A stretch of 64,000 nt of DNA from contig NW_027266297.1 in assembly GCF_022045235.1 (NCBI RefSeq), positions 53,258,001 through 53,322,000 of the forward strand, read 5' to 3'. This DNA comes from Haliotis cracherodii (taxonomy: Eukaryota). The notes under the pieces were generated by a model. The model had not been told where the DNA came from. It was given only the letters and a program-made list of their open reading frames with translations, and ran no database searches. The position numbers were made by a program, and so were the translations under genes. Shown piece after piece: positions 581 through 42,332 of this stretch (position 1 is the first letter of the stretch; each line of letters opens with the position of its first letter).

Positions 581-698
581 TTTTTTTCAATTGATGTTCC
601 TTAATAAAATTGGTGAAACTATGTAAATTAGCATGGTATTAATATAGTTCAAGATACCAAAAATAATTTGTGAATTGATCTTGATCTTACCATTACAG

Positions 699-2030
699 GT
701 GCTTCCAAGATACACAATCCCCACTGTGCGAGGTGGCATAGTGGTCAATGTGTGGAATGTTACTACGGGTGGTTTGGACCTCAGTGTGAGAGAAAGTGTG
801 ACAGGAACTGCTGGACCACTGGGTGTTATAAGGGTACAGGGATCTGTGAACAATGTGTGCCGGGTAGATACGGAAGACATTGTAAAACAAGATGTCCTGA
901 CAACTGTAGATCGGGTAGAGACGGGACTGTGAACTGTGATCGGGTCGGCGGGAGATGCCAGGAGGGGTGTAAGGAAGATTGGTGGGGAGACACGTGTAGC
1001 AAGCGATGTAATAGTAACTGTAAGAGGGGGGCATGTATCCAGCAATCAGGACATTGTATCGGTGACTGCACACATGGCTGGCACGGATTGCACTGTGACA
1101 AACAGTGTTCAGTTGGGTGTCGTGGAAACCGCTGCAGTTGTGTGACAGGGGTATGTACGCATGGGTGTGGGAAAGGCTGGTCAGGTGAAACATGTGAAGA
1201 GCAAGAACAGCGAAGAGAATGTAGTGCCACGTGTAAAACGCATGAGTGTGATACGAATGGGAGGTGTTTGAAAGGATGTATACATGGATTCAGAGGCAGC
1301 TCCTGTAACGAAACATGTCCGGTGAATTGCCACATTTGTCAACAAGACACAACGTCATGCACGAGATGCGAACACGGATGGCAGGGACCTATCTGTACCA
1401 GCAGAACTATCACACATCATCATCATCGTCCGTCCAAAAAGGAACCGATATTCGACTCACTTGATTCCCCAGCTGTACCAAAAGGTATGTATATCACAAC
1501 CGATAGTGAAGCAGTCAGTCTAATCAAAATGAATGTTTCGGTCCAACTGCTTAACAAATGGATCCATCAAATCATTGTACTTTAATGGACCATCGGACAT
1601 TGAAGTAGTTTAGCTGAGGAATATATCCTGGTTAGTTGAATTCAATATATTGATGATGTATGTTCCTTTAACATAGAAATGAAAACCAAAGACGAAGAAT
1701 AATGCCTTTGCTTGTTAATGTTTTGGTATCATTCTCTTCCTTTCAGGTAGGGCGAACAGCAGGAATAATGGCAACGTGTTGCTGGTCCTGGTAGCTGTGA
1801 TTATCAGTGCAATGGGTCACATTGATCTGTCATGTTATGCCTATGAAACAGTCCGAATACAAGGAACCGTACGATACATCTTACAAAAGTTACGGCTACA
1901 CGTAAAACGGTTGTGTGTGCAGATTGCATGTCATGAGTGTACACTAGTTCATGCGTTTGTAAATTGGCGGTTCCAAAGGCCGTCAATATCAGATTGTATG
2001 TCCAGTGGTACGGTAATATTATCACCGTAG
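699..2030 (+). CDS. R1: multiple EGF-like-domain surface protein (MEGF10/SCARF-like), 5' partial
   Basis: EGF exon 699-1484 (ttacag|GT ... AAAG|gtatgt, phase 1-1, matches ORF 752-1585) with an HHHH stalk. Terminal exon from 1747 (tttcag|) reads GRANSRNNGNVLLVLVAVIISAMG and stays open to 2030. No signal exon was identified. Confidence 0.8.
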
Positions 2031-7971: not shown

Positions 7972-10309
7972 ATGGATTTGACTTGGATATTGTTAATCTA
8001 TTCATCGCTTGATGTCGGAAGTTGGGGTACGTATACATATTACTAATATATATGTTATATATTCATTTGTCTAAATACATATTGTTCCTTTTAAATGCTA
8101 TGCATTCATATCAATAAATGACTTTCTCACAACCTGTTTACTTGGTACCAATTCACTTCCTGCATATGAAACAACATCATTCCTTGATTAAATCGTTTTT
8201 GTTTCAGGGGGCAATGATGTTTGCAAACATATTGAGGTGTGCTGTCTTAATAAAGACAAACAGTGTAAAAGGGAAGCGTCGTCAGATATTTGCAAAGTCG
8301 AATGCAGTAAATATCATGATTGTTCCACAAACGACGTTCGGCTTTCGAAAGAAGGGATTGCATGCAAAGCAAATTGTACAAATGACATTGGGGCATGCGA
8401 TGTCGAATGCATCCCTGGACATTACGGTACCAAATGTCAATTTGGATGTAATGGTAAATGTAGAATGCATAAGTGTTACAGAGATAATGGCTCGTGCGTT
8501 GACGGTTGTGAGGCAGGCCACTTTGGAGATAAATGTGAGTCGGCATGTAACAGTAATTGCAAGGACAAAAAATGTGACAGGAGTAACGGAAGCTGCATCA
8601 ATGGGTGTTCTCCTGGCTATTACGGTGAAGACTGTCTTAGTAAATGTGAAACATCATGCCGTTATCACGTTTGTATTGGGAAGACTGGCAACTGTCTTTT
8701 TGGATGCACTGAGGGTTTCTATGGGCTTCTGTGCAAAAAGACTTGCTCTGACGATTGCTTTCTATGCCATCCTGAATTTGGGGAATGCATCTTTGGTAGG
8801 TACATATTTGAAACATCTTTTGAAGTAAGAGCGAATTCAGAGCAATACGAGTATTGTGATACATAATCAATCAACATTACCATGTTATTTGGATAACAGA
8901 TTAAGAATACCTTTGTGGTTCAGACAATAGCTCATGGTAACCCTCTTGATTGTTCCAGATCATAGTCCTGAGCTCGAGCTCGAGGGTACTCCTTGCACCA
9001 CGAAGATACTCGTTGTCTTTTGGGGGTCAGCTGGAGTGCTCATCCTCCTTGCTGGAGCGGCAGTGTTGATGTGCAGGTAACTCAGATTATTGTTTAATGT
9101 TTATGTATATTCAAACGCCAGTGTACATGTTGCTGTACATATGTCAGATAAACATACATGAGGCCAATGGTCCAGATAATCAACCATTGTTTTAAAACTG
9201 TTGATAACAGTAATGTTCTATTTTTCAAAACCATTTTTTATCTTCTTTCATTTTCAATAACATGTCAAATATAAGCCCTGCTAACAAAATAAAATATCAA
9301 AATTTTAATCCGCTTTAAAATGATATAAAGCATGACTGTGGCATACCTTGTACACATAATTGTAATTATGGTGTGAAATTAGTCAGATCACCTTTTGACT
9401 GTTTATGACCTATCAGTGTAGTGATGAGTTGTAACTTGTTTCCTAGTCATGGCTTAGGATCATTCCTTTAGATCAACCATGATCAGCACCTTAGTCTTAT
9501 ATTAGTTAATTACCTTAGTTAATAAATCTAACAAATAGGCTGATAACCTGACGCGTTTATATAAATTTTGAAACTACGCGTTGTCAGTCTGTATTGGTAC
9601 AGTTAGGATAAAACAGCACAAAAAACGAATAATACATTTCGTGTTTATTCACCACAGGAGCCAAACTTGTAGTTTCATTCACAAGAAAAAGAAGAAAGGA
9701 TTAGACACGCTGTTCATAGATACTAGAGCTCCAATGGACTTACCCAGCGTGCCCAGTCAAGACACCAGATCAAGCCACTATGAGGAAATCATGTGTGGTG
9801 AAAAAGATCGTCACTTTCAGCATATTAGTAAAAGTACGGGTAGTATAAACCTGAGAACCTTAATCAACACCATGAAACATCCAAACCAATGCAACACCGC
9901 TAAACGTAAAAGAAACAGGGCAAACGTCGGGAGAAACGCAATGTCACTGGCGTCATCGGTGCACACAATAGACAATTTTCCAACGTGTTGGCTAGGATCG
10001 GCGACTGATTTTGATGAAATGTCGGAACATCCTGATAAGAAGGAAGCACCTCTGGTAAGACCCCTTCAAGCTTCCCAGAAGGAAGCCGTGCGTTTTTCAG
10101 ATGTCCCAAGGGATGAGGATGAAGCAGAAGATATGGATACATCCGTGAAGGAAAGAGAGGGAGAAACTAAGTCACAGGCTGACGATGTGCCAAGGGAAGA
10201 AGCTGGCAAGAGATCCTACATCTCCGCTGTTTTTAATGAAACGGATGAAGATACAATGATCGATGATTCATGTAAAGGAATATATCCGGGATTGAAAAAG
10301 GAAGACTAA
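7972..10309 (+). CDS. R2: type I EGF-repeat receptor with long Tyr-motif tail (470 aa)
   Basis: Exons 7972-8026 (MDLTWILLIYSSLDVGSWG), 8208-8795 (EGF array), 8959-9076 (TM PCTTKILVVFWGSAGVLILLAGAAVLMCR) and 9658-10309 (tail with SHYEEI, YISAV, YPGL). All junctions are GT-AG and the total is 1413 nt in frame. Confidence 0.9.
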
Positions 10310-14830: not shown

Positions 14831-16273
14831 TAAACTGCAAATGTTACATTAAAGTCAAAATATCAAATCTTGAAAATGAACAAGAGAATATACGGAAGTA
14901 GTTCCCATGCAACGTTCCATACAAAGTTTCAGAGCGAAGGACGTCTTTTGAGAGAGTTTTACAGCATATTCGAGGGTATCAAAGGGAGAAGGTAAGTACA
15001 TATATATTATCGAAAAATAACATGTGTTGAGCCCCGGCACTACTAACTTCGAACCTTTTGAAAAATGTCATGATCAGGTGTCATTATTGTTTTGAGAAGC
15101 AGTGTGAAGTTTGAGCTTCATTGTTCCGGTGGTTTCTGAAGAGAGGATGTTCACAAAACCTGGGATGCTTTTTTAGAGAAATAACAGCATGGTCAAGGTG
15201 CAAAGGTTAAATATAGGTCAAACTTAAAGGTCGAAAAAGAAACCCAGATTAGTATGTTGAGTAACACCACCAACTAAACACACAACGGATATCATTACTT
15301 TTGAAAAACATGGTAAGGGTTATATAGCTGACGAGGCGAATTTCGAATGTTTTGTAAGCACATTACACAAAACACATGTAGCGACAAGTTGTTTGTCGTT
15401 TGCAGTTTTAGGAGAAAGACCCTTCTTTAAAGCTGCATAGTCCGTATCATTTCAGAATTTCACAATCTCCAAAATCTAGTATATTTAAATGTTATTGACT
15501 CTCACGTCAGCACAATATATTTGGACGTTTATTATCATATAAACAAAATGCAGGTAGAGACATATCGCGTGACTGCATTTTACTGGAGCATGTAAAATGG
15601 AAATGATATTAACATTTGTCACGAACACGGCCCATGCCTTTTTACATTTTTCAATACTAATTCAAAAGAATTCACTTATTCTTTTAAAGGTCCTCTTCAT
15701 TCATTATACGACTTTTCATACATTATGTAGAAAACAATGGTCGTTATCTTGATCTATTAAAGAAATAGCACCATTGTTCATGAAAATCAATCAAACGATC
15801 ATAAAATGCACGCATAATATTATTGCCACGTAACTGAAATTCAGGCTGTAAAGTTTACGGATCAAGAAACAGATTACAAATGGAAATACAAACACATCTT
15901 GTTATTATATTGCAAAATTTATCCAGTATTTTCCGTAAAATGATACGATCATAAATTTCATGAACTGTTTCCTTTTGAGAACATTCAGTTTCCTTTAACA
16001 TATGAGTTAATAGCCAATGTTTTTTTATAGCAGGCACAGTTGGAGAAGAAGGAATGTGTCCTATATACATTTATGAATATGAGTTGTGTGGTATATGTAT
16101 CAGTGAATAGATAGAAGAAAAGAAGCATAACAAGTTTAAACATTGAATGTGTTTATGGATGTAAGATTATTCAACATATTCAGGCAATGTGTCGCCATAG
16201 TGGTAGTGTCTGTTTTTGTGTTCATCATTGTGTTCCCATTAATTGGGTTACTATCCTTTTCAACAGGGGAAAC

Positions 16274-17765
16274 ATGGACCTAATTTGGATTATGTACGTC
16301 TGTCTAACTCTTGTTCTTGCTCAAGGTGACAAAGTGACCGGAATGAAAGGTACGTAAGCATTTAACGCATGTCACTATACTTCAAATACACTTAAAAATA
16401 TTCATGTCTGCACGATTTCCTTTCAATGCTTTGACGAAGACATACACCAGTCACATTTTAATATTGCTTTGGTGGGTTGGGACGTCCAAGTGCCTTTTAG
16501 ACAGAGGCGAACTTATTCGGGGTCCTCCCGTCCTCCATGCGGCGGACGTGGCCGAGCCAGCGAAGACGGCGCTAGTGAAAGGCGTTGAAAATATTTTCTT
16601 GTCTGGAGAAGAGGGTCCAAAACTCGCTGTCGTACAGCAATTCGCTGACGTCACACATTCTCTTCGTCAATTTTGTGAGGACGGAAGACGCTTTGCCGAC
16701 CCGCCTGTTGATCTGAGCATCCACGGGCAGATTGTGTGCGACGGGGGAGCCGAGGTAGGTGAACTTATATTCAGTTGTGCCTTGACATAAATGTTCTGGC
16801 TTGGTATATTTCAGAACCCGAACCCGAACGTTCTTGCACAGCAGAGATACTCGCTGCTTTTTTGGGGTCAGTTGGAATGTTCATTCTACTTGCAGGAGCT
16901 GCAGTGGTCATGTATAGGTAAGTCAGGCCAGTGCACATTAACACTGGATGAAGAGATATACTTAAATGATGTAATTCAATTTTAATATCAATCCCATGAC
17001 TACCTGCAGTAACGCTCCTTTGCATATCAATTATGATGAAATTAAATGTATGAATATATGACTGTACTTGCATGTGTCGAAGCATGTGTGTGTAGTTGTG
17101 TATGTGTGCGCGCGTATACGCTTTACTTATCTTCCAATTATGATAAACATTGTTGTTCCCACAGGAATCGACTACTTACTTCCTTTGGGAAAAGGAGAAA
17201 AAAGGGATTAGATACACTGTTCGACGACACTTCCTCTCCTATGCGACCTCCGTCAAGGGCCCATCGCGAATCCATGTTAAATGGCTATGCTGACGTAATG
17301 AGCATCGACACTGCCTGTCACTATCGTCGTGTCAGCAGAAGTCTTGGCAGTATCAATTTTAGAACGTTCAGAGCGAGCACCGTGAAGGGTTCTACTCTGT
17401 ACAATACTAAAAGAAGTAAAATGAGCACAAACGCCGCAGTGGACATTACCATATCAGTGGAGCCCCCACAATTTAAAATATACGATCAGCAATCGTATTG
17501 GTTGGGCACGGAGACGGACTTTGAAGACGTGTACAAAAGTTCCCCAAAGAAAAGGGCAACTCTTCGCAGATACTATGCAGGTCTTCGGGAGGAAGCCGCC
17601 ATGTACCCCGACACCCGTACAGATAAAGATGAAGAGGATACAGCATCGGAGGAACCACGGGGAGCCACTGGGACGCAGACACATTGTGCATCAAGGGATG
17701 TACGAAGCAAATTTCTTTACATCTCCCCTGTGTTTAACGAAAAAAAAGCAGAATCAAAGACATGA
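16274..17765 (+). CDS. R3: ectodomain-less transmembrane paralog of R2, putative signalling adaptor (259 aa)
   Basis: Exons 16274-16349 (MDLIWIMYVCLTLVLAQGDKVTGMK, donor gtacgt), 16815-16917 (EPEPERSCTAEILAAFLGSVGMFILLAGAAVVMYR) and 17165-17765 (tail homologous to R2: KKGLDTLFxDT, GSINxRT, WLGxxTDF, YISxVFNE). Total 780 nt with no stop or frameshift, and no EGF exon in intron 1. Confidence 0.85.
16460..16770 (-). mobile_element. RTE-clade LINE relic in intron 1 of R3
   Basis: Minus strand reads KFTYLGSPVAHNLPVDAQINRRVGKASSVLTKL and RLRWLGHVRRMEDGRTP, both RTE ORF2 signatures; internally deleted. Confidence 0.85.
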
Positions 17766-18429
17766 AAACATTTCATTGATGATATCGGTAAATCAGGACA
17801 AAGTGTCGGCAGTCACTGAGTTTGAATATCTACATCTGTAAGTGTCAGAAAATCTTAACTATCAACTTATTGTGCATATACCTGGTGACTGGAAACATAC
17901 GTTACTGCCAAAATGACGAATTGTACTCTTTACGTCATCAAAGACCAAGACAACATGTGCGATCTGTTTCGATATCAAGTATGGTATGGACTGTAATAAT
18001 CTATTAGTGATCGTGGCACGCATGTGGTGTGATGTTATTGATTAGCGTAGTGCGTCGCCGTTCTAATATCACAGGCTAGAGAGAAATGACTCTTTTGCTA
18101 TCTCTTTAATGTCAGTATAGCACCCCCTCGTTAGTCTCCGAGTTATCTCAGAGAAAGTCAACCTTAACCTCTAAGTTTTTCATACATGTTTTCTCATGCG
18201 AACTACCAACTGTATGGAGCTATATTCTTAAAATGAGTATTTAGGATTATTGTATTAAATAAACTGTTCGTGTAAATACATATTCAGCTTACATAAAATG
18301 TTCTATTATTAATTATGTAACAAAGAACATATTTGTAAATAATTTATTCTATGGATTATACGATGAGCTAACATGTACAAGCCTCAGTGTATACATTAAA
18401 GTTTAGTAATTTATAGATATTGCACTTAT

Positions 18430-20579: not shown

Positions 20580-21981
20580 TATGCTGAACAACAAAAGTTC
20601 CTGTGACATTGAATAAGATTTAATGCAAAGTCATGTGTTTTACCAAATCTGAAACAATTACGGTTTGCAACAGATGAAAGACTCCTGTAAGTGTTCAAAT
20701 GGTTTAATTTGCCATACTGACTTCAGAAAATGCGTGATTTCATAAAAACATGAATATGCCAAAATATCAATTTACAAATCAATAGCGTGTGTGTCCACCT
20801 CATGGAACGGACCAGGCGTCGCACAAAGTCCTGTGGGATATCTGTCCATACTTGCTGGAGCATGTTTCGAAGTTCATGGAGTGTCTGTGGAACACGTGGT
20901 TTACGTCGGAGGCGCCGAACAATCTTATCCCACATGTGCTCGACTGGTGAGAGATCGGGGGAGCGAGCCGGCCAGGGGATGACATTCACGTTGTTTTGTT
21001 GACGAGAATCCTGAACAAGTCGAGCAATATGAGGCCGGGCGTTGTCATGTTGAAAGGTAATGCCTTGGCCACGACGACGCAAAAGCGGTAAAAACAGGGC
21101 CGATGATCTCGTCGCGGTAGCGCTGTCCATTGAGATTTCCCTCTACCACTATCAAACGGGTCCTCTGTCTTGCTGTAATCCCACCCGATACCATAACGCT
21201 GCCGCCCCCGAACCGATCTTCTTCAATGACACAATGATTGACGTAACGTTCATGTCGACGTCCATCGCTGTGGCTGAGGTGAAAACGAGACTGGCCAGTG
21301 AATGGAACTTGTCCCCACTGCATAGACGTGCTTGACGGGGGTTTCCTGTCAAAATGAGACGTCTGGCGGGTCTTCTGGCGACAATCCCTGCACATCTGAG
21401 GCGGCGACGTACGGTTTGTGAAGATATTCGTCGAAAGCCAGGGATACTTCTTGCAGTCACTGTTGCTGGCTGGAATCGATTTCGTAGGTGTGTTGTTCGA
21501 ATCCAGTTGTCTTGGTTACGCGTGGCCTGCCACTCCGAGGATCGTCTCTGACTGCATTCGTCTGTTGCCAACGTTGCCATAAACACCAAGTGGTGTTTCT
21601 GTGGACGTCAAATTGTCTTGCAACATCACGTTGACAAGATCCTGCTTCAAGCATACCAATGGCTCACAGACGCTCATTTACGGATAGGTGTGGCATTTCG
21701 TAATGTTGAATAATTGCGTAATATTGTTGTTTTTCTGAGTGGCTGTTTTCAGCACGATGCTAAACAATGCATATTGAATCCCGTAAACGCACATGTTTTT
21801 TATACCCATTCTTAGGTTGTGAAATGCATGGGGCTTGCATAAAAATCAACTCTTTTCTGTATCAGTTCCGTTTTTTGTGTCTTGATTCCATACATGTACT
21901 ACAATAATGAAAACCAAACTTTACTTGTTTGAAAAATGCACTAAAATATTGGTGTCACAGGAACTTTTATTGTTGAGTGTA
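20580..21981 (-). mobile_element. Tc1-family DNA transposon, defective copy 1
   Basis: Imperfect ~28-bp TIRs (TATGCTGAACAACAAAAGTTCCTGTGAC at the left end, inverse at 21954-21981). The transposase is split over several ORFs: RDVARQFDVH, GGGSVMV, FQHDNARPH, WPARSPDLSPVEHMWD. Confidence 0.93.
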
Positions 21982-23469: not shown

Positions 23470-25556
23470 ATGAGGGGTCAATGTTGCATTCACGTACTTG
23501 GTGTGGTAAGTTAGGTATTTGTTTCTAATCTATACGATAGATATACATGTAAGTTTGTTGTCTGTACGTGTTTTTTTATAATGCTGCACTCGGCAATATT
23601 CCAGTTTTGTGACGGCGGTCTAAATAGTCGAATCTGGATCAGACAATCCAGTAAGCATGAATCTACGCAATTAGCTAGGACACGATGATATTCATCAACC
23701 ATGTCACCGAGTCACCCGATGTTTACTGAGGCAACAATTAAGTGGAGGTCGGATGACAATCGCGCATGTTTGCTGTTGTTTTTTCACTCTCGCAATGTTT
23801 TACTCTGCCATTCATCATGCTCTTACGTTTTTACTACTTTTGATGAAACAAATTATAATATACCTGATATGATGGGTTTTGCAGAGTGTAATGGTGGGAC
23901 TGGGATCTCTGTTGATACAAGGAAGTGAGTATTACATACTTATTATTGTCACTCATTGTATTCATTACGATCATGAATCACTGTAAAGCTTTCATTAACA
24001 CTCCTATGTGTATCACTGCTATATGATATTCAAAGAGTTCATTAAAGCTCCTAAATAACGACTATTAATGTCATGAAAACTATGTATGTTTCATAAATAA
24101 GTAAATGCTGTCGTTACAGGTGAGGTCTGCAACGAGAGATGTTCCTATTGTGTGGGGACGAAGTGTCGGGAATGCCTCTACGGCTGGTATGGACGCGATT
24201 GTAATGTAAAATGTAGTGAGTTTTGCTGGCATGGTGGTTGTGAGAGGATAACAGGACGGTGTCACCAGTGTGTTCCTGGGAGACACTCAAGCTACTGCAC
24301 CAAACTCTGCCCACAACACTGCAGGGAGAATAGCAAGGGTCGGGTCAACTGTGACCTATCAACTGGAAACTGTTTGGAGGACTGCGTAGAAGGAAGATGG
24401 GGTCCACGATGCCAGCACAGATGTCACGCAAACTGTAAAGATGAACTTTGCTACAAAGAAGATGGAGGGTGTCTGAAAGGCTGCCTTGATGGACTGTATG
24501 GCGTCAAATGTAAAAAGCAATGTTCAGAAGGTTGTTTGAGCAGCACGTGTGAATGGTTGACTGGTAAATGTAACCAAGGATGTAAGGTTGGTTTCCTTGG
24601 CTCCACGTGTTCGTACCCCATGACTAGACACTGTCTTAACCAGGCTTACTATGCAGAGCATCATACCATGGCGTGTACCGATGGATGTGAAGATGGTTAC
24701 ACTTCAGCAAGTTGCAACGAAACATGTAATACCAGATGTCTAAAATGTCATCAGTATTCACAGACATGTCAGTTATGTATGTCTGGATTTTATGGAGACA
24801 AATGCCAACTCGAATGCCATACGAACTGTCAGGAATTGAACTGTGACATGTCTGGTCGATGTGACAGAGGGTGTAAACGAGGTTTCCGTGGTGGATATTG
24901 TAATGAAACCTGCCCCTACAACTGTTTGGCATGTAGTCAGCATTACAAGACTTGTACTGAGTGTAAAGTAGGGTATACTGGAGCTACGTGTACAGAGGTG
25001 GAGTCATACAACGAGTTAGACGTCACAGGTAATGATGCTACATATCTATTCTAAAATACATTGGTAACAAACCTTGGTGAATGACGGCAAAGCTAAATTT
25101 GATTGATAACAATATTGTTAACTGAAAGAAGCGGAATTAGCGTCGATGTGCACAGATGGTGTTAATACATTTGACGTGATACCGTTGACTACCACAATAA
25201 ATACGGATTAACGAATCTTTGTCTCAGAGTATATCCTCTGTATACATTTAGATTTCCCCAATAGAAGCGTGTCTGGACAATCGGGGTCCGGCATAATGAG
25301 GTTTACTGTGTAATGCTCTTTCTTAACAGTTTAGTATTACTATGTAACCCATTAAATGTTCAAGAGTAGTTACATGTTCTTGATAGTTCTTAGATTATAT
25401 AAAAATCAAATATAGCTATGCTCAACACTTATAACGTTTGTTTAAGTCAAAGTGTCTTGCCTTGTTTCAGATACGGTGTCACACAGCAAGGCCTGCATCT
25501 GGTTAACACTAATAATGTGCACTGTAACGTATCAGTTGTCCTCGTGCATAACGTGA
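23470..25556 (+). CDS. R4: EGF-repeat protein with GPI-signal-like C-terminus (356 aa)
   Basis: Exons 23470-23505 (MRGQCCIHVLGV), 23885-23924 (SVMVGLGSLLIQG), 24120-25028 (EGF array) and 25471-25556 (DTVSHSKACIWLTLIMCTVTYQLSSCIT*). Total 1071 nt in frame; AATAAA near 25788. Confidence 0.88.
23560..23720 (-). mobile_element. SINE-like family C, degenerate, in an R4 intron
   Basis: gcactcggcaatattccag...ggcggtct...tctggatcagacaatccag. Confidence 0.7.
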
Positions 25557-25834
25557 AAGAACATTGGAACACGATCTTAGATGTTATATCAATCTTTGTG
25601 GACTCATCATCTTATGTGACGTTGGCAGGTCTTTTTGTTTACCAACTGGATGTCTTGTTTCTCGTTTTTAGTGGCAACGCTTTTCAATTTTCAATGACAT
25701 CCTCTGTTGAGTGACCACTAAATGGTAAAATGATATAACAGAATGAAATCGGACAACATGCTGCACACGCATTTATTACCACATTCCAATAAAATAGTTT
25801 CCACTTAACTGAAGTGTGTTGTTCCTTTGTTTCC

Positions 25835-27360
25835 TTCACCGCCTACGTACACTCAACTTCACCGCCTCCGTACACTCAACTTCACCGCCTCCGTACACTC
25901 AACTTCACCGCCTCCGTACACTCAACTTCACCGCCTCCGTACACTCAACTTCACCGCCTACGTACACTCAACTGCACCGCCTACGTACACTCAACTTCAC
26001 CGCCTCCGTACACTCAACTTCACCGCCTACGTACACTCAACTTCACCGCCTACGTACACTCAACTTCACCGCCTCCGTACACTCAACTTCACCGCCTACG
26101 TACACTCAACTTCACCGCCTACGTACACTCAACTTCACCGCCTACGTACACTCAACTTCACCGCCTCCGTACACTCAACTTCACCGCCTACGTACACTCA
26201 ACTTCACCGCCTACGTACACTCAACTTCACCGCCTACGTACACTCAACTTCACCGCCTACGTACACTCAACTTCACCGCCTACGTACACTCAACTTCACC
26301 GCCTACGTACACTCAACTTCACCGCCTCCGTACACTCAACTTCACCGCCTCCGTACACTCAACTTCACCGCCTACGTACACTCAACTTCACCGCCTCCGT
26401 ACACTCAACTTCACCGCCTCCGTACACTCAACTTCACCGCCTCCGTACACTCAACTTCACCGCCTACGTACACTCAACTTCACCGCCTCCGTACACTCAA
26501 CTTCACCGCCTCCGTACACTCAACTTCACCGCCTACGTACACTCAACTTCACCGCCTACGTACACTCAACTGCACCGCCTACGTACACTCAACTTCACCG
26601 CCTACGTACACTCAACTTCACCGCCTCCGTACACTCAACTTCACCGCCTCCGTACACTCAACTTCACCGCCTACGTACACTCAACTTCACCGCCTACGTA
26701 CACTCATCTTCACCGCCTCCGTACACTCAACTTCACCGCCTCCGTACACTCAACTTCACCGCCTCCGTACACTCAACTTCACCGCCTACGTACACTCAAC
26801 ATCACCGCCTCCGTACACTCAACTTCACCGCCTACGTACACTCAACTTCACCGCCTACGTACACTCAACTTCACCGCCTACGTACACTCAACTTCACCGC
26901 CTCCGTACACTCAACTTCACCGCCTACGTACACTCAACTTCACCGCCTCCGTACACTCAACTTCACCGCCTACGTACACTCAACTTCACCGCCTCCGTAC
27001 ACTCAACTTCACCGCCTACGTACACTCAACTTCACCGCCTACGTACACTCAACTTCACCGCCTACGTACACTCAACTTCACCGCCTACGTACACTCAGCT
27101 TCACCGCCTACGTACACTCAGCTTCACCGCCTACGTACACTCAGCTTCACCGCCTACGTACACTCAACTGCACCGCCTACGTACACTCAACTGCACCGCC
27201 TACGTACACTCAACTGCACCGCCTACGTACACTCAACTTCACCGCCTACGTACACTCAACTGCACCGCCTACGTACACTCAACTGCACCGCCTACGTACA
27301 CTCAACTTCACCGCCTACGTACACTCAACTTCACCGCCTACGTACACTCAACTTCACCGC
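25835..27360. repeat. 23-bp minisatellite, about 66 copies
   Basis: Unit CTTCACCGCCT(A/C)CGTACACTCAA; it accounts for the three overlapping ~525-aa ORFs. Confidence 0.97.
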
Positions 27361-27545
27361 ATTATTTTGCTCCGGCAAGAGTTCTCCATGAAGTAACTTG
27401 ATGGTGGCGTGACGGACAGGGAGAAACAATGAACCATTTATCACATTCTACTGCCTTCCTTCTATTCTTGATCAGCCATGAAGCAGTTAACATGTCAACG
27501 ATTTTGAAATGTACATAACACGTTTTAATCTTTTACTTTCATATG

Positions 27546-29406: not shown

Positions 29407-31160
29407 ATGACGCTGCAACCCTGGCTTGTTGTCACAGTGGTAAGATCAACAAGTTATTGCTTTTCCATGAATGTTTCATATCGACAATGACACTCCAGTT
29501 AACCAACTCTGTTTACCTAATGCGTGTATGATTCTGATATATAATTCATATGCAAATGTTGAAAAACTAAAATGTGTCTTATGTTTGTAAAATAATATAA
29601 ATTTATACATTTTACATTTTAGTGTTTCAGTTCAGTGTTCGGATTTTCTTTGGTACATGGAAGTAAGTATATCTTCATTGTAATGTTTAAATAGCTCCAA
29701 CAAGTTATAGCTGTATATCATAGTAACAACACGTTTCTCTTTCGTAATAATATACTTGTATTAAATATACAATATATTTAATGAAATACAGTTAAATATC
29801 CGGAATTTCTGTACTCAAATACTCGTACATAGTATACACACATGGTATCATTACAGGTGAGGTTTGCCACGAGAGATGTTCCTATTGTGTGGAGACGAAG
29901 TGTCGGGAATGCCTCTACGGCTGGTATGGACGTGATTGTAATGAAAAATGTAGTGAGTTTTGCTGGCATGGTGGATGTGAGAGGATAACAGGACGGTGTC
30001 ACCAGTGTGTTCCTGGGAGACACTCAAGCTACTGTACCCAAAACTGCTCACAACACTGCAGGGAGAATAGCAAGGGTCAGGTCAACTGTGACTTATCAAC
30101 TGGAAACTGTTTGGAGGAATGTGCTAAAGGAAGATGGGGTCCACGATGCCAGCACAGATGTCATGCAAATTGCAAAGAAGGTCTTTGCTACAAAGAAGAT
30201 GGAGGATGTTTGAAGGGCTGCCTTGATGGATGGCACGGGGTCAAATGTAATAACCGCTGTTCAGTCAGATGTCTCAACATCACGTGTCACTGGTTAACTG
30301 GTAAATGCACACATGGATGTATAAAAGGTTTTACTGGCTCAAAATGTTCCCATCTACACACAAGACACTGTGTGGACCCTGAGGCATATCACACAGACGA
30401 TCAGTCCGTGGTGTGCGAGGGAGGATGTAAGCCTGGGTGGACCTCTGCCCTCTGTGAAAACAAATGTGAGGAGAGGTGTGAGACATGTCACCAGTTTGAC
30501 AAAACCTGTCAGTTGTGTCAGCCCGGATTTTATGGAGTAGCATGTCAACTTGAATGTGGCATGAACTGTAACCAAACACACTGTGACATGTCGGGTCGGT
30601 GTGACAAAGGGTGTATGAGCGGTTTCCATGGTGTGTATTGCAATGAAACCTGTCCATTTAACTGTTTAAGGTGCAGTCAATTTCAAAACACATGTACAGT
30701 CTGTAAAGCAGAATACAAGGGCGACCAGTGTCATGAGACCACCACTCCTAAAGTTGGCCACGCTACAGGTACCTCTCGTATTGATTATCTTTCATAACTG
30801 AAATGTTTCTTCCTATCAACAGCCAAGTGGCATGCCTCACACATTTCATTTACCATCATTAACGTCATCACACCGATAAGACCAATACCGTTATGTAAAC
30901 TGTCGATGTAATATGACAACAGTGATATCAGATCACAGTCACAATGTCATATCGGAAAAAGTTATCCATAAGATGTGTAAGAAATATATATAGTTCATAA
31001 TTCTTGATTATTCTTGAGAATTAAAACTTTTTACCCAAATATTTACACTGTTGCTAACTGTTGGTGTGGGCTGTCTTTTTCAGACGAGGGTGTACACAAA
31101 CAGGCGAGCATCTTGGCAGTAGTATTTCTTTATTCCGTAGCTCGTATTATTACAACCTGA
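29407..31160 (+). CDS. R5: EGF-repeat protein with GPI-signal-like C-terminus, paralog of R4 (353 aa)
   Basis: Exons 29407-29439 (MTLQPWLVVTV), 29623-29662 (CFSSVFGFSLVHG), 29857-30768 (EGF array) and 31084-31160 (DEGVHKQASILAVVFLYSVARIITT*). Total 1062 nt, with the same exon phases as R4. Confidence 0.88.
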
Positions 31161-33554: not shown

Positions 33555-36287
33555 ATGTTTATCAATGCATTTACTTGTTTAACACTCTTCATCTGTGGAT
33601 TTATCAATGGTAAGTAACAGGGTTGCAACAGTTTTATGATTTTTTTTGTTGAAGTTTATAAATGATCAGAAAGTTAAACTGAAAGTAACTCATATCACGA
33701 TCACAAAACGCACATTGTTTCTTGAGTATTTACTTGTATGCATATTCATTCCCGGTGACAATCAAAATATACAAATGTGAGTTACTTAGTAACTGAAAGC
33801 AATATTGTCTTGAATTTGTATGATTGTACAGGCTGTACAGGGGGCTGCAAAGATGGCTTCTACGGGCCCCAGTGTAGATATCGCTGCAATGGCAATTGTC
33901 GGAACAACCGCTGTAATACCTCTGCTTTTGGTGCAGCATCTTGCACAGATGGATGTAAAGACGGCTTCTGGGGTAACAGGTGTATCAGTAGATGTCCCCA
34001 CTTTTGTAAGCGATGCCATAATGACACTTCGTGCAGTGAATGTGATGGCTTCCATTTCGGACCAAACTGTACTACAAACTGCAGAGGAACATGTTCAGTG
34101 TCAGGTTGTAACAGTGACGGGACATGCAGGCAGGACAATCACACGGCTGATCCATGTGGCTCCAACTGCCTCCAGTGTAACGCCTCGACCGGCAGCTGCA
34201 ACCGCTGTAAAATAACTTACGCAGGAGTGAAATGTGAGGTCTATTGTGGAAACTGTAACGGAACTTGTTCAGTTGATGGCTGTATGGAAGGATGCTCGTC
34301 GGGATATCGGGGACCGTATTGTGAAGATGCATGTAGCAAATGGTGTTACGAAAATGTCTGTGATCAAGAGACCGGGAGTTGTTCAAAAGGGTGTCGTGGT
34401 GGATATACAGGGGACGTTTGTTCCAAAATATGCCCACATCACTGTCTACGGAACATCTGTCATCAACATTCAGGAAAATGCAAACACGGCTGTCAGAATG
34501 GATATTTCGGACCTTTGTGTAAATCTGTTTGTGAAAACTGTTTTGATGACGCCTGCAGCCGCAGCAACGGCCGGTGTGAGTACGGCTGTGTGGACGGCAA
34601 CTATGGGTTGGACTGTAACCAGGTGTGCAGTGAGCTGTGCAAGTCTGGAAGATGCCAGAGGGAAGATGGTGCGTGTTTAAAGGGAACGAGCGGAAGTAAG
34701 TTGTTTAATGTCACATCTATGTATCATGCGAAGTTTAGAAATGTTGGTCGCGGATAGCAAATGGATGGGTGACCATGTTCGACAGCGTTATTCCTGATAT
34801 TTTCTTAGGCTCCGATACTGCCTACCCTTATGCTAAACACTTTGTTCAAAATATGCCTTTGTTCACCCAGGATTAAATGGGCCAACTGAGAATGAAAACC
34901 GAGTGCACACTGGTTTATAGACATGGTTATAAGTGACATAAACATTCACTTGGTGAAACCTGGCGCATTGTATAAGGACTTCTTTTTCCTCTTCCTTTCC
35001 TCCATCTTAGTACATACATGTTGTCTTACTCCGTATTAATTATTGTGATACAATAACAGTAACTGTTGTATTATTAGTAAATACAAAAGATGTAATATGG
35101 AATTATCCAGGTTCAAGTTTGACATGTAGCTTTAAACAACGAATTTGAATAATTTTTCACAATACGCTTCTTTCGTTTGCAGAATCTACCCCAAAACCAT
35201 CCTTAGATGCAACAGTCAGTGCAAATGTGTATTTGATCCTTGCGTCAGTGGGAGTATTCTTGCTCTGTGTTGTTGCAGCAGGAATACTGATGATCAGGTA
35301 CATATGATAATGGTCCCGTGAAGATCTGGATTAGAATTGGTCTTCAGCAACCCATGCTTGTCGTAAGAGGTGATTAACGGGATCGGGTGGTCAGTCTCGC
35401 TGACTTGGTCAATGCATGTCATCGTATCCCAACTGCGTAGATCGATGCTCATGATGTCAATCACTGGATTGTCTGGTCCAGACTCGATTATTTACAGACC
35501 ACTGTCATATGGCTGGAGCAATGCTGAGCGCGCCGTTAAGCAACAAACAAACAAACAAAAGAAAACATATGACAATGAAGACAAATGATAGCAAGTGGAA
35601 AACACAAAGAGACTATGGCCCTTATGTAGAATGTCTCTTGATGATGAATTCCACTTTTCTATCACCGAAAACATGCAGTGATTTGCGAAATAATATTAAC
35701 CATTGATATATATGAAACTTATTCACAATATAAACTTAATTATAACAGTGGCTCTCTCTATTGTAACAATTAATTGTTGTGTCAAGTCAGTGGTGACCTT
35801 CACTAAACACCACTGTTATTCCTATTGCCACAGGTTCTGCCGGTCTCCCTGTCTTAACAGCCTGAACAGGAACAATCCTCCACCGTCAGGTCGATCACTA
35901 CCAGACCCGCCCCCACTACAGACCAGCAAGAACATGTACAGTGTTATATACGAAGACCAAATGGACCCGAGTGCCCAATCTCTAAGAAGCAACACCCTAA
36001 CTCCACCTTCGAGAACCCCTGGCCTCGATAGGCCAAACAGTTTGCCCCTGTCCAAAGACGATCCAGAAGAGGATGTGTTCTCAACCTCAGGTGAGGTGCT
36101 ACAAATGCGATCGCTTTGTGATACAACGCCATCAGAAGAACCTGAACTACACAGCCTGTGTGCCTCTCCTGACCCCGACGGTTCAACTTACGAGAGTCTC
36201 TCAAGTAGTGCACCGGGACACAAACAGACAACTGTTCCTCGTCCCTACATCACTCCAGTCACTGATGATCAACCCGAACAATCATAA
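33555..36287 (+). CDS. R6: type I EGF-repeat receptor with Pro-rich, ITIM-like tail (about 495 aa)
   Basis: Exons 33555-33609 (MFINAFTCLTLFICGFING), 33832-34695 (EGF array; an alternative in-frame acceptor lies 9 nt downstream), 35183-35297 (TM VYLILASVGVFLLCVVAAGILMIR) and 35834-36287 (RSLPDPP, MYSVI, STYESL, PYITPV). Total 1488 nt. Confidence 0.9.
35313..35560 (+). mobile_element. SINE-like family C in an R6 intron
   Basis: gtcccgtgaagatc...cttcagcaacccatgcttg...gcgccgttaagcaacaaacaaacaaac. Confidence 0.85.
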
Positions 36288-40192: not shown

Positions 40193-42332
40193 ATGTCGTG
40201 GTGTTGCGCCGTGTTGGTGGTGTTGGCTGCCGTTGTTGGTAAGTAGTTACATGTTGTTGTATACAGTGAAAAAATATATATCAGTCGATGCTTATCAGAA
40301 CACGTTATTGTCCAAGACGAATCACAAATTCAAAGTCATGTCTGACTTAATTATTGTATGTGGACTGACTGTGTCTACTCGTTCATTTCAAATGTTATCA
40401 GCCCCTGTTTCTCCACTGTTAAGGAAGGAACGTATATTGTATGTAGCAATAGTTTACACGTCGTTTTAGGTTAAGATGATTCAAGAATTTTATGAGGTGA
40501 TCGATGAGATAGCTCAGTATGCATGTGAACACATGTAACTGGTATCAGAGATATATGGAATACGTCTGTTAATATGATTTTTAAAAGGAATTATCTCTTT
40601 TTCAGAGACGTCTCAATACGGCAGTCACTGCTTAAGATCAAGCGAACCCAAGCCGTGTATGTACTGTGTGAGGGGGTGGTTTGGCGAGGACTGTAGCCGA
40701 AATTGTCCATCATGTGATAATTCTGGTTGTGACAGAAATACAGGCATATGCGTCAACTGTGCAGATGGGTTATACTCAGAAAGCTGTTCCTTGAAATGCC
40801 CAGATCACTGCAAGACGAGAAATGACAGCCAGGTTCGCTGTGAAAGGATTACAGGACATTGTATGGAAGACTGTAAATCTGGATGGTGGGGAGACAAGTG
40901 CAACAAGCGTTGTAGTGACAACTGTCTCCGTTCAGACTGTTTCTTCTATGATGGTTCGTGCGCTTGGGGCTGCAAGGATGGTTGGACGGGAAGCATGTGC
41001 ACTGACAACTGTCCAGAAGAATGCGCCTTGAACAAATGCTCCCAACGTGGAAAATGTACTATTGGGTGTAAGAAAGGTTTCTATGGAGAAACATGTGAAA
41101 ATAAATGCAGTGACACGTGTAGGAATAACAACTGCTACTTTGACAACATCATCCATTACACGGTATGCCGAGATGGGTGTAGCGATGGATGGAAGGCTGC
41201 TTACTGTAATGAATCTTGTTCTACCGGTTGTAGAAAATGTAATCAACATAATGGTGAATGTTCCAAATGCATGGTTGGTCGCTGGGGTGTACAGTGTGAG
41301 AAACGCTGTTCAACCTGCAGCAACTCACTCTGTGATGTCACTGGGGAGTGCACAGAAGGCTGTCAGAGTGGTTATCATGGACACATGTGTGACCGAGTAT
41401 GTCAACCCGACTGCCTTGAGTGTCGCAAAAACGATAGCGAGTGCCTCGTATACAAACCTGGGAAGACGGATGAAAGTATTGACACTATTCTGGAAGATCT
41501 GGGTGATGGTGAAAACCCCAACGATAGAGGTATGCAGGTACAGCCACAGAATAGCGATACATTGATCCAATTAACTGACATCTCCCCAATCCAGGACAAG
41601 TAAAACATTCCAGATAACATTCTATTAGTTTTGTTTGAATTTTCTTCTGTCAAAGATACGTTATGTCTTTATTTGTGAGTTGAAAAATATAGAACAAATA
41701 TAGACCTATTATGATATAATACTCGACAAGTATCATTCCCCTCCATCTTACATATATCTATGCCACATAAAATGTATTTATTTGTTTGGTCTCTGGAGCA
41801 TGCATAATGACAGAACGTGTATAGGCATTTTAACCTGTATATACTTATGTACGTGCATATCTTTCAGGCGACGCTCACGTCCTAAGGATAGCAATACCGG
41901 TCTCCGTCGCAGTGGCATTTGTTGTCTTCATTATTGTATTGATTGCCATCTGCAGGTAATACTATAAAGAATTATTTCCATTGTGAACTTTCACCATTCT
42001 TGTCAAGGGAAAAGTGTATAGTGTTTCGTACTGACGATCTTTAATGTGTTAATCTGTAGCCAGCGACGAAAGCAGGGTAGATGATGTGTATTAAAGTAAA
42101 ATCAAATTTAAAGAATCATGTGTGGTTTCGGGGATAATTCATGAATCTATTAAGTGTGGGTGTACATGATGTCTTATGTGCTACAATATGTTGCAGGTGG
42201 AGAAAACTACATAAACGTGGACATGTTGAGGAACAGCGTGTTACAGAGACACCCTCGGACTCTGAGACAGAGTCGTTTGTTACCCCCGAGACACAAGTCA
42301 AACGAAAGGCAACATCCCTGGAGATGTTGTAG
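40193..42332 (+). CDS. R7: type I EGF-repeat receptor with short Tyr-free tail (397 aa)
   Basis: Exons 40193-40238 (MSWCCAVLVVLAAVV), 40606-41529 (EGF array), 41868-41955 (GDAHVLRIAIPVSVAVAFVVFIIVLIAICR) and 42197-42332 (WRKLHKRG...KATSLEML*). Total 1194 nt. Confidence 0.9.

What the first reader, a model, noticed from the sequence alone, without database searches (positions are those of the whole stretch)
17286..17333. ITAM-like YxxV-x8-YxxV in R3 aligns to a single-Tyr ITIM-like motif in R2
Seen: R3 has YADVMSIDTACHYRRV, while the aligned R2 segment is SHYEEIMCGEKDRHFQHI, with Phe at the second position and Ser at -2. Known: an ITAM is YxxL/I-x6-8-YxxL/I and binds tandem-SH2 Syk-family kinases (Draper signals through Shark); an ITIM is S/I/V/LxYxxI/V/L. 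Inference: one F/Y change may switch the paralogs between inhibitory and activating output. Val at +3 is non-canonical, so this is tentative.
Basis: partly seen in the sequence, partly recalled or inferred. Interest (0 to 1): 0.75.

Follow-up and report, generated by a model that had tools for sequence, protein, structure and literature searches.

The report
ITAM-like tail motif in abalone receptor
A short membrane protein of abalone, a copy of a neighbouring EGF-repeat receptor that has lost its outer domain, carries two conserved tyrosines spaced like a vertebrate immune activation motif, but the motif is not the textbook form and nothing yet shows what it does.

Summary
Window 17286-17333 encodes YADV-x8-YRRV in the tail exon of R3, and an ungapped paralog alignment sets R2's YEEI-x8-FQHI (9779-9826) opposite it.

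R3 is a real gene. Contigs from coded runs splice a signal-peptide exon directly to the TM exon and on to the tail exon, giving an EGF-less single-pass protein of about 259 residues. Public abalone proteins (H. rufescens, H. asinina) have the same layout.

It is not a canonical ITAM:
- Position +3 is Val; it is Gly in one abalone and Ile in another.
- Arg-Arg follows the second Tyr.
- The spacer is as conserved as the tyrosines.
- 7 of 10 R3 tail tyrosines are equally conserved.
- The relaxed pattern arises in 2-4% of shuffles.

R3 orthologs also fit the ITIM pattern at the first Tyr, so "ITIM versus ITAM" reduces to one Y/F position. The genome holds a SHP2 ortholog; no Syk ortholog was located (9 of 47 SH2 hits tested).

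Verdict: ITAM-like, plausible, unproven. Earlier scan notes report ITAM-like tails in other abalone receptor families; I did not check them.

The parts
16274..16349 (+). R3 exon 1, coding part: ATG plus signal peptide (MDLIWIMYVCLTLVLAQ...), ends in phase 1 before donor GTACGT at 16350
   Evidence: Sequence. tblastn of P0001 residues 1-27, 89% identity. Contigs X1 rec1, X3 rec3 and X5 rec7 run continuously from 15921/16049 into it, which gives its own 5' UTR.
16404..16790 (-). Reverse-transcriptase-like open frames (retroelement fragment) inside R3 intron 1 (intron 16350-16814)
   Evidence: Open frames. The reverse-transcriptase likeness is my recollection of LINE C-terminal motifs and was not tested. 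Other abalones carry different sequence between 16466 and 16569 (loose ends).
16815..16917 (+). R3 stalk + transmembrane exon (EPEPERSCTAEILAAFLGSVGMFILLAGAAVVMYR)
   Evidence: Spliced contigs X3 rec5 and X5 rec7 join exon 1 to it; X3 rec5 and X6 rec12 join it to the tail exon across a GT..AG intron. A helix at residues 51-83 is predicted in the ortholog P0001.
17165..17765 (+). R3 cytoplasmic tail exon, stop at 17763-17765
17286..17297 (+). First half-site YADV (Tyr invariant in all 7 R2/R3 sequences)
   Evidence: 17296 T>G (Val to Gly) in the run X3 contig and in P0002.
17322..17333 (+). Second half-site YRRV (Tyr in 4 of 4 R3 sequences; YRRI in H. asinina)
7972..8028 (+). R2 signal-peptide exon
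   Evidence: tblastn of P0004 residues 1-19, 100% identity.
8207..8794 (+). R2 EGF-repeat exon (absent from R3)
   Evidence: 94% to P0004. One search finds no EGF-exon match between window 10300 and 16800.
8958..9077 (+). R2 stalk + transmembrane exon (..GTPCTTKILVVFWGSAGVLILLAGAAVLMCR)
9658..10309 (+). R2 cytoplasmic tail exon (start approximate; stop at 10307-10309)
9779..9826 (+). R2 segment YEEI-x8-FQHI, homologous to the R3 motif

Best explanation
The 48 bases encode a di-tyrosine segment in the disordered cytoplasmic tail of R3. R3 is a transcribed, spliced single-pass membrane protein without EGF repeats: a signal peptide, a stalk of about 20 residues with one Cys, a TM helix, and a tyrosine-rich tail of about 180 residues. 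It arose by tandem duplication of the neighbouring PEAR1/MEGF10-like receptor R2 and is kept in several abalones. The segment lies in one of four sequence blocks that both paralogs share. Its first tyrosine (S-x-Y-x-[D/E]-[V/I]) is invariant in both paralogs and is the most likely common phosphotyrosine docking site for an SH2 protein, such as a Src-family kinase or SHP2. The second aromatic residue is Tyr in every R3 and Phe in every R2. I read it as a paralog-specific second phospho-acceptor that turns a one-tyrosine site into a two-tyrosine site with ITAM spacing. That makes it ITAM-like, not a canonical ITAM, and its partner is unknown. Shown: the sequence, the homology of the positions, their conservation, the splicing and the loss of the EGF exon. 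Inferred: phosphorylation, SH2 binding, and any activating versus inhibitory output.
For: Motif and ungapped paralog alignment. Orthologs: the first Tyr is kept in 7 of 7 sequences; the second position is Tyr in 4 of 4 R3 (window, P0001 H. rufescens, P0002, P0003 H. asinina) and Phe in 3 of 3 R2 (window, P0004 H. rufescens, P0005 H. rubra). The run X6 contig also keeps both half-sites unchanged. The motif window is 13 of 16 identical between the window and H. asinina, against a mean of 9.4 of 16 over 186 windows and 57% for the whole tail. R3 is expressed as a spliced EGF-less mRNA: the exon 1 to TM exon joint is in X3 rec5 and X5 rec7, and the GT..AG joint from TM exon to tail exon is in X3 rec5 and X6 rec12. 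Public models of 271 and 251 aa also lack EGF. The tail is predicted with low confidence (pLDDT below 50 for residues 115-266 of P0001), as expected for a disordered region that carries short linear motifs. The R3 tail has 10 Tyr against 3 in R2. A SHP2 ortholog with tandem SH2 domains is in the genome, and 47 SH2 matches plus many SH2-kinase genes are present. Family precedent: Draper ITAM-Shark, Draper-II ITIM-Corkscrew, MEGF10/Jedi-1-Syk (PMC6219719, PMC4503800, PMC8092387; passages read); oyster ITAM receptor CgIgR-CgSyk (PMC6994640; passages read).
Against: Neither +3 residue is L/I in the window. One abalone has Gly at +3 of the first Tyr (P0002; X3 contig; these may come from the same source). 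The second Tyr is followed by Arg-Arg, which as I recall is unusual for Src/Syk substrates. The spacer (MSxDTACH) is as conserved as the tyrosines, unlike a typical ITAM spacer. 7 of 10 R3 tail tyrosines are conserved in H. asinina, so conservation of these two is not special. 40 of 186 windows are at least as conserved as the motif window. In R2 the block HFQHISKSTGSINLRT is identical in 3 of 3 sequences although it has Phe, so the block is kept for some reason other than phosphotyrosine. The relaxed pattern is expected by chance at 2-4% per tail. No Syk-family kinase was located in the genome. No outgroup exists to say whether Tyr or Phe is ancestral.
Confidence: 0.4

Rival explanations
1. 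Conservative aromatic swap in a motif that does not use phosphotyrosine. The shared block H-[Y/F]-x-x-[V/I]-S-[R/K]-S-x-G-S-I-N-x-R is a binding or serine-phosphorylation module. In R3, R-R-V-S fits a basophilic Ser-kinase site (consensus recalled). Tyr versus Phe at this position would then make no signalling difference, so there is no ITAM/ITIM switch.
For: H52, S57, S59, G61, S62, I63, N64 and R66 are invariant in 7 of 7 sequences. The R2 block around Phe is identical in 3 of 3 orthologs. Tyr/Phe is the most conservative aromatic exchange (general knowledge). A weak helix is predicted over P0001 residues 109-133 (low confidence).
Against: Tyr and Phe are each fixed within their own clade (4 of 4 and 3 of 3). 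The R3 tail has gained Tyr at several other positions where R2 has Cys, Asp or Ser, which suggests a general shift of R3 towards tyrosine-based signalling.
Confidence: 0.3
2. True ITAM. Both tyrosines are phosphorylated by a Src-family kinase and bind the tandem SH2 domains of a Syk/Shark-type kinase, which makes R3 activating. R2, with one tyrosine, recruits SHP2 and is inhibitory.
For: The spacing x8 fits YxxΦ-x6-8-YxxΦ. Both Tyr are conserved. The MEGF10/Draper family uses exactly this logic (PMC6219719, PMC4503800, PMC8092387). A mollusc ITAM-Syk pair is reported (PMC6994640). SYK is listed among annotated abalone transcripts (PMC8428104, passages). SHP2 is present.
Against: Val, and in one abalone Gly, at +3 instead of L/I. 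Arg-Arg follows the second Tyr. R3 orthologs fit the ITIM pattern too (S-G-Y-A-D-V, S-S-Y-A-E-V). No Syk was located among the 9 SH2 hits (of 47) and 1 kinase exon tested. R2's Y-E-E-I is, as I recall, the optimal ligand of Src-family SH2 domains rather than a typical SHP2 site.
Confidence: 0.15
3. The second tyrosine is a YxxΦ sorting signal (YRRV/YRRI) read by the AP-2 mu2 subunit. R3 would then be internalised or sorted differently from R2 (FQHI cannot bind), with no role for SH2 proteins at this position.
For: Y-R-R-V and Y-R-R-I fit YxxΦ with Arg at +2 (pattern matches; the AP-2 preference is recalled, not tested). The basic residues fit a sorting signal better than a kinase site.
Against: The YxxΦ pattern is found in 88% of shuffles of the R3 tail, so the match carries almost no information. 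The flanks conserved with R2 are not explained.
Confidence: 0.1
4. No function: R3 is a truncated duplicate on its way to decay and the two tyrosines are there by chance.
For: The EGF exon is lost and a retroelement fragment sits in intron 1. The pattern is within chance expectation.
Against: The reading frame is open over all three exons. Splicing is correct in contigs of three coded runs of three organism codes. The same EGF-less layout and 57-94% tail identity are seen in H. rufescens and H. asinina.
Confidence: 0.05

Closest known systems
Drosophila Draper-I (ITAM, binds Shark) and Draper-II (ITIM, binds Corkscrew/SHP2)
   Same: A receptor line with multiple EGF repeats in which variants of one tail carry an activating two-tyrosine motif or an inhibitory one-tyrosine motif (PMC6219719, PMC4503800, PMC8092387; passages read).
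   Different: In Draper the variants are splice isoforms and the ITAM is YxxI/L-x6-12-YxxI/L with an NPxY nearby. Here they are tandem paralogs that differ by Tyr/Phe, +3 is Val, there is no NPxY, and the Tyr-Tyr copy has lost its whole EGF ectodomain. The tails show no sequence similarity to any protein outside abalones (3 hits in 1.84 billion representatives).
Mammalian MEGF10 and Jedi-1/PEAR1 (ITAM-Syk engulfment signalling)
   Same: NCBI names the R2 ortholog 'platelet endothelial aggregation receptor 1-like'. Both are single-pass EGF-repeat receptors with tyrosine motifs in the tail.
   Different: Pfam finds no domain in R2 orthologs at E up to 0.1. There is no NPxY and the tail is not homologous. 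Syk binding is untested.
DAP12 / FcR gamma / CD3 zeta signalling adaptors (features recalled, not from a call)
   Same: R3 has a very short ectodomain with one membrane-proximal Cys, an acidic residue (Glu) at the start of the TM helix, and a two-tyrosine motif with ITAM spacing. R2 has Lys at the same position.
   Different: There is no sequence relationship. The Glu is at the edge of the TM helix, not inside it. The tail is about 180 residues with 10 Tyr rather than a short ITAM tail. +3 is not L/I. Pairing with a receptor is not shown.
Oyster CgIgR-CgSyk pathway
   Same: A mollusc surface receptor with a cytoplasmic ITAM reported to recruit a Syk kinase with two SH2 domains (PMC6994640; passages read).
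   Different: That receptor has Ig domains and what its authors call a classical ITAM. It is unrelated in sequence to R2/R3.

Membership tests
Canonical ITAM (YxxL/I-x6-8-YxxL/I) | Two tyrosines with 6-8 residues between the two four-residue half-sites | tested here: met
   YADV-MSIDTACH-YRRV has a spacer of 8.
Canonical ITAM (YxxL/I-x6-8-YxxL/I) | Leu or Ile at +3 of both tyrosines | tested here: not met
   Window and P0001: Val/Val. P0002 and the X3 contig: Gly/Val. P0003: Val/Ile. The canonical pattern gives no match in R3.
Canonical ITAM (YxxL/I-x6-8-YxxL/I) | Cytoplasmic position in a membrane protein | tested here: met
   It lies downstream of the TM exon in the spliced transcript. A TM helix is predicted at residues 51-83 of P0001.
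Canonical ITAM (YxxL/I-x6-8-YxxL/I) | Both tyrosines conserved in orthologs | tested here: met
   4 of 4 R3 sequences. However, 7 of 10 tail tyrosines are conserved as well.
Canonical ITAM (YxxL/I-x6-8-YxxL/I) | A Syk/ZAP-70/Shark-type kinase (two SH2 domains plus kinase) in the same genome | tested here: inconclusive
   There are 47 SH2 matches. 9 were compared with solved structures: 2 CSK-like, 2 SHP2, 2 PLC-gamma-like, 2 Grb2/SHP2-like, 1 Nck/PLC-gamma-like. One kinase exon was EGFR/JAK-like. None was best matched by SYK or ZAP-70. 38 SH2 hits were not examined.
Canonical ITAM (YxxL/I-x6-8-YxxL/I) | Phosphorylation-dependent binding of tandem SH2 domains | not testable with these tools
   This needs peptide binding or pull-down experiments.
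ITIM ([S/I/V/L]xYxx[I/V/L]) in R2 | Match to the pattern | tested here: met
   SHYEEI matches in R2. The pattern is weak: 8.7% of R2 shuffles and 81 matches in 26,681 residues of window open frames. R3 orthologs match it as well (SGYADV in P0001, SSYAEV in P0003).
ITIM ([S/I/V/L]xYxx[I/V/L]) in R2 | SHP-type phosphatase with tandem SH2 domains in the genome | tested here: met
   Two SH2 exons at G000:C15:9.905-9.908 Mb match PTPN11 N- and C-SH2 at E 8e-31 and 6e-36.
ITIM ([S/I/V/L]xYxx[I/V/L]) in R2 | Recruitment of the phosphatase and an inhibitory output | not testable with these tools
   This needs experiments.
Draper / MEGF10 / CED-1 engulfment receptors | Ectodomain of EMI plus multiple EGF-like repeats | tested here: inconclusive
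   R2 has a Cys-rich EGF-like exon with 200 or more relatives in the genome, and NCBI names its ortholog PEAR1-like. Pfam reports no family in P0004 or P0005 at E up to 0.1. R3 has no such exon.
Draper / MEGF10 / CED-1 engulfment receptors | NPxY motif in the tail | tested here: not met
   No Asn-Pro occurs in either tail (read from the translations).
DAP12 / FcR gamma-type adaptor (features recalled) | Very short ectodomain with a membrane-proximal Cys | tested here: met
   Exon 1 splices directly to the TM exon. The Cys in S-C-T-A-E is present in 3 of 3 R3 sequences that cover it (window, P0001, P0003).
DAP12 / FcR gamma-type adaptor (features recalled) | Charged residue inside the TM helix that pairs with an opposite charge in a receptor | tested here: inconclusive
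   Glu in 3 of 3 R3 and Lys in 3 of 3 R2 at the same position. It is the residue just before the hydrophobic core, at the N-terminal edge of the predicted helix. Pairing is untested.
YxxΦ AP-2 sorting signal | Tyr-x-x-bulky hydrophobic residue in a cytoplasmic tail | tested here: met
   YRRV/YRRI fit, but the pattern occurs in 88% of shuffles. Binding cannot be tested here.

The most novel reading that the evidence does not exclude
R3 is an invertebrate counterpart of DAP12/FcR gamma, made from a receptor rather than inherited. A tandem copy of a PEAR1/MEGF10-like receptor lost its EGF exon and kept the stalk Cys. It changed the Lys at the membrane entry to Glu, gained a second tyrosine at ITAM spacing and several more tyrosines, and now pairs through the Glu/Lys charges with its EGF-bearing neighbour R2 to deliver a Syk- or Src-dependent activating signal.
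Probability: 0.1. Interest if true: 0.8.

Novelty: new variant of a known kind. Interest (0 to 1): 0.4.

Why it matters
Receptors of the Draper/MEGF10 line are the best-documented case of ITAM and ITIM signalling outside vertebrate adaptive immunity, and molluscs have expanded EGF-repeat receptors to hundreds of copies. A pair of neighbouring paralogs that differ by one Tyr/Phe at ITAM spacing, one of them stripped to a bare signalling chain, would be a compact natural experiment. It could show how activating/inhibitory receptor pairs and signalling adaptors arise. It is directly testable with peptides and chimeric receptors. If the tyrosine has no signalling role, the case is a reminder that loose tyrosine patterns in tyrosine-rich disordered tails are expected by chance.

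Tried and rejected
1. Outgroup to polarise Tyr versus Phe: none found. The R3 tail exon matches only R2 and R3 in the whole genome (5 candidates scored, 2 matches). A profile of both tails found nothing else in the window or in the 32 loci then held or in the genome (tail and TM positions matched only R2 and R3, though 91 of 889 candidates were scored and most were EGF). The search of 1.84 billion representatives gave 3 hits, all abalone. The R2 tail exon alone gave no hit among proteins of 114-362 aa.

2. More R2 orthologs: the search with the tail region of P0004 gave only P0004 and P0005.

4. Syk ortholog: I looked for pairs of SH2 matches near kinase matches (139 of 820 candidates scored). 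I classified 9 SH2 pieces and 1 kinase piece against solved structures, and none was Syk-like. My own recollection-based guess that the C67:27.88 Mb gene was Syk-like was wrong.

5. Pfam on P0001, P0003, P0004 and P0005: no family, apart from a sub-threshold DUF4605 match in P0003.

6. Protein Atlas on P0001: only generic small single-pass membrane proteins (best 0.92, gpUL132; 1 of 10 best hits share a family). I treated this as uninformative.

7. The small extra exon seen in other abalones (T-V-N-D-N-L-I-A...) is not in the window at 3 mismatches or fewer or by tblastn.

8. Literature: no paper in the library links this gene or abalone MEGF/PEAR1-like genes to ITAMs. In one search the matches I opened (2 of 26) were the surname Itami, and the other listed titles looked unrelated. 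One search returned no title bearing on ITAMs. One search returned 1 irrelevant paper. Supplementary files were not consulted.

Exons were searched one at a time, and the fold used the public protein P0001.
Full report
WHAT IS THERE

The window is part of a 1.18-Gb animal genome. The proteins closest to the genes studied here are from abalones: Haliotis rufescens, H. asinina and H. rubra.

The bases 17286-17333 read TAT GCT GAC GTA ATG AGC ATC GAC ACT GCC TGT CAC TAT CGT CGT GTC, which is YADVMSIDTACHYRRV. They lie in an exon that starts behind the acceptor AG at 17163-17164 and ends at the stop at 17763-17765.

A second copy of the same tail lies at about 9658-10309. The two tails align at 35% identity without a gap over this stretch (E 5.6e-26). 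R2's YEEI (9779-9790) is therefore homologous to YADV, and R2's FQHI (9815-9826) to YRRV.

THE GENES

R2 has four exons:
- a signal-peptide exon (7972-8028);
- one large Cys-rich EGF-repeat exon (8207-8794);
- a stalk + TM exon (8958-9077);
- the tail exon.

It is 92-100% identical, exon by exon, to the H. rufescens protein P0004, which NCBI names 'platelet endothelial aggregation receptor 1-like'.

R3 has a signal-peptide exon (ATG at 16274, donor GTACGT at 16350), a stalk + TM exon (16815-16917) and the tail exon. It has no EGF exon. The whole-genome search with R2's EGF exon finds 200 or more relatives, seven of them in the window, but none between window 10300 and 16800. The 465-base intron between R3's first two exons holds only reverse-transcriptase-like open frames on the other strand (that likeness is recalled, not tested).

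IS R3 EXPRESSED?

I laid the contigs of four coded runs, each from a different study and organism code, on 15900-18300. The runs are only guessed to be RNA, but they contain spliced forms.

- X3 record 5 (1312 bases) and X5 record 7 join exon 1 to the TM exon.
- X3 record 5 and X6 record 12 join the TM exon to the tail exon across an intron with GT..AG ends.

The tool reports the first joint as 16343 to 16813 with four extra letters, GTAA. Read, those letters plus the next two are the end of exon 1 with AGT in place of the window's ATG (Ser for Met, as in P0001). The true joint is therefore 16349|16815, with GT..AG ends and in frame. This reinterpretation is my inference.

X5 record 7 and the unspliced records X1 record 1 and X3 record 3 run continuously for 225-350 bases upstream of the ATG, so R3 has its own first exon and is not an alternative end of R2.

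In X1 and X6 exon 1 continues into a different small exon (T-V-N-D-N-L-I-A...). This exon is also present in the H. rufescens model P0001 but absent from the window.

By exon lengths (76 + 103 + 598 bases) the direct form would encode 259 residues.

The public proteins P0001 (271 aa, H. rufescens, 94% identical in the tail) and P0003 (251 aa, H. asinina, 57-58%) have the same EGF-less layout. P0001 is called isoform X2. I did not see isoform X1, and the search could only return proteins of 110-348 aa.

CONSERVATION

In the seven-sequence alignment the first Tyr is invariant. The second position is Tyr in 4 of 4 R3 sequences (window, P0001, P0002, P0003) and Phe in 3 of 3 R2 sequences (window, P0004, P0005). 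The X6 contig also shows no change at either half-site.

Between the window and H. asinina the 16-residue motif window is 13 of 16 identical, against a mean of 9.4 over 186 windows. The best block (14 of 16) runs from the motif into S-R-S-x-G-S-I-N-F-R.

RESULTS THAT WEAKEN THE ITAM READING

(a) Position +3 is Val at both sites. It is Ile only at the second site of H. asinina. At the first site of P0002 and of the X3 contig it is Gly (17296 T>G), and the same sequence has Tyr for Cys two residues before the second Tyr (17317 G>A). P0002 and X3 may be one source.

(b) The spacer is as conserved as the tyrosines. As far as I recall, ITAM spacers are free to vary.

(c) 7 of the 10 tyrosines of the R3 tail are conserved in H. 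asinina, and 40 of 186 windows are at least as conserved as the motif window.

(d) In R2 the block H-F-Q-H-I-S-K-S-T-G-S-I-N-L-R-T is identical in 3 of 3 sequences although it holds Phe. Eight positions of the block are invariant in all seven sequences. So the block is maintained for a reason that does not need a phosphotyrosine there.

(e) The pattern alone is weak. It appears in 1.9% of shuffles (x6-8, L/I/V) and 4.2% (x6-12), and at 0.045 matches per 200 residues in the window's own open frames. About eight receptor tails in the window were available to be read.

(f) The first half-site of R3 orthologs is S-G-Y-A-D-V or S-S-Y-A-E-V. It fits the same ITIM pattern as R2's S-H-Y-E-E-I, and the Asn at -2 in this window is the exception. 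The contrast 'ITIM in R2, ITAM in R3' is really one shared tyrosine site plus one Tyr/Phe position.

EFFECTORS

The genome has 47 SH2 matches. Two adjacent ones on C15 are an SHP2/PTPN11 ortholog (E 8e-31 and 6e-36). The other adjacent pairs are CSK-like, PLC-gamma-like or Grb2-like. A candidate on C67 was not Syk-like. I therefore did not locate a Syk-family kinase; 38 of the 47 SH2 matches were not examined, so this is not evidence of absence.

From the literature (passages read):
- A Syk with two SH2 domains and an ITAM receptor are reported in oyster (PMC6994640).
- SYK is listed among annotated abalone transcripts (PMC8428104).
- Draper's ITAM is given as YxxI/L-x6-12-YxxI/L and binds Shark (PMC6219719).
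- Draper-II carries an ITIM that recruits Corkscrew (PMC4503800, PMC8092387).
- MEGF10 and Jedi-1 signal through Syk (PMC8092387, citing Scheib et al. 2012, which I did not read).

STRUCTURE AND FAMILY

AlphaFold on P0001 with a six-row alignment gives a signal helix, a TM helix at residues 51-83 (pLDDT 65-74), and a tail below pLDDT 50 from residue 115 on. A low-confidence helix lies over residues 109-133, which include the motif. This fits a disordered tail carrying short motifs.

Pfam finds nothing in R2 or R3 orthologs. Neither tail has an NPxY. The tail has no relative outside abalones.

READING

The best-supported account is a conserved tyrosine-based docking block shared by both paralogs. 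R3 has acquired, or R2 has lost, a second tyrosine at ITAM spacing. R3 as a whole is a tyrosine-rich signalling chain without an ectodomain. I put this at 0.4.

Whether the second tyrosine is read by a tandem-SH2 kinase (0.15), by AP-2 as a sorting signal (0.1), or not at all because the aromatic residue is structural (0.3) cannot be decided from sequence.

The adaptor-like features deserve a bench test but are not shown to matter:
- a single stalk Cys;
- Glu in R3 opposite Lys in R2 at the membrane entry, each kept in 3 of 3 sequences.

Two earlier first-reader notes on this window made these points (s1-837999, s1-838009). I confirmed the EGF-less transcript and the conservation of the charges, but not their function.

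Two earlier follow-up notes report ITAM-like tails in other abalone receptor families of this genome (s1-834033, s1-836061). I did not check them.

VERDICT

If the motif is functional, it is a new variant of a known kind: Draper/MEGF10-type tyrosine-motif signalling, here split between tandem paralogs, one of which has lost its ectodomain. Interest is moderate.

Noticed in passing
window 16404-16790 (- strand) and 16466-16569: Reverse-transcriptase-like open frames sit in R3 intron 1. Contigs of runs X3, X5 and X6 leave the window sequence at 16466 and re-enter at 16569, so other abalones carry different sequence there (an insertion or replacement in this genome).
   Followed up: partly
window 16350 (exon 1 donor); not in window: In runs X1 and X6 and in the H. 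rufescens model P0001, exon 1 is followed by a small extra exon (T-V-N-D-N-L-I-A-P...). It has no match in the window at 3 mismatches or fewer. This genome may make only the direct signal-peptide-to-TM form.
   Followed up: partly
window 16835-16850 and 8988-9003 (approx.): At the membrane entry R3 has C-T-A-E and R2 has C-T-T-K. Glu is kept in 3 of 3 R3 sequences and Lys in 3 of 3 R2 sequences. The residue lies at the N-terminal edge of the predicted TM helix.
   Followed up: partly
window 17165-17762: The R3 tail has 10 tyrosines against 3 in R2. At five aligned positions R3 has Tyr in 4 of 4 sequences where R2 has Phe, Cys, Asp/Asn, Cys/Phe or Ser. The second motif overlaps R-R-V-S, which fits a basophilic Ser-kinase site (consensus recalled).
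   Followed up: partly
window 25793-27398: A stretch of about 1.6 kb is open in three frames on the + strand and made of a repeated unit reading ...PPPYTQLHRLRTLNFTA.../...SVHSTSPP... It is a minisatellite downstream of the next EGF receptor gene.
   Followed up: no
window 20726-21607 (-) and 52650-53525 (-): Open frames contain ...ITFQHDNARPHIARLVQDS..., which recalls Tc1/mariner-type transposases (recalled, not tested).
   Followed up: no
G000, genome-wide; window 674-1440, 24101-25051, 29796-30794, 33759-34754, 40578-41600, 47180-48190 (-), 59974-61125 (-): Single-exon EGF-repeat arrays related to R2 number at least 200 matches in the genome (1717 first-look candidates, 150 scored). Many lie in clusters on C34, C26, C67, C78 and C1.
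   Followed up: no
G000:C34:58.34-58.52 Mb: A tandem array of genes with an SH2 exon followed by tyrosine-kinase exons lies about 5 Mb from the window. Two adjacent CSK-like SH2 exons lie at C1:59.019 and 59.023 Mb.
   Followed up: no
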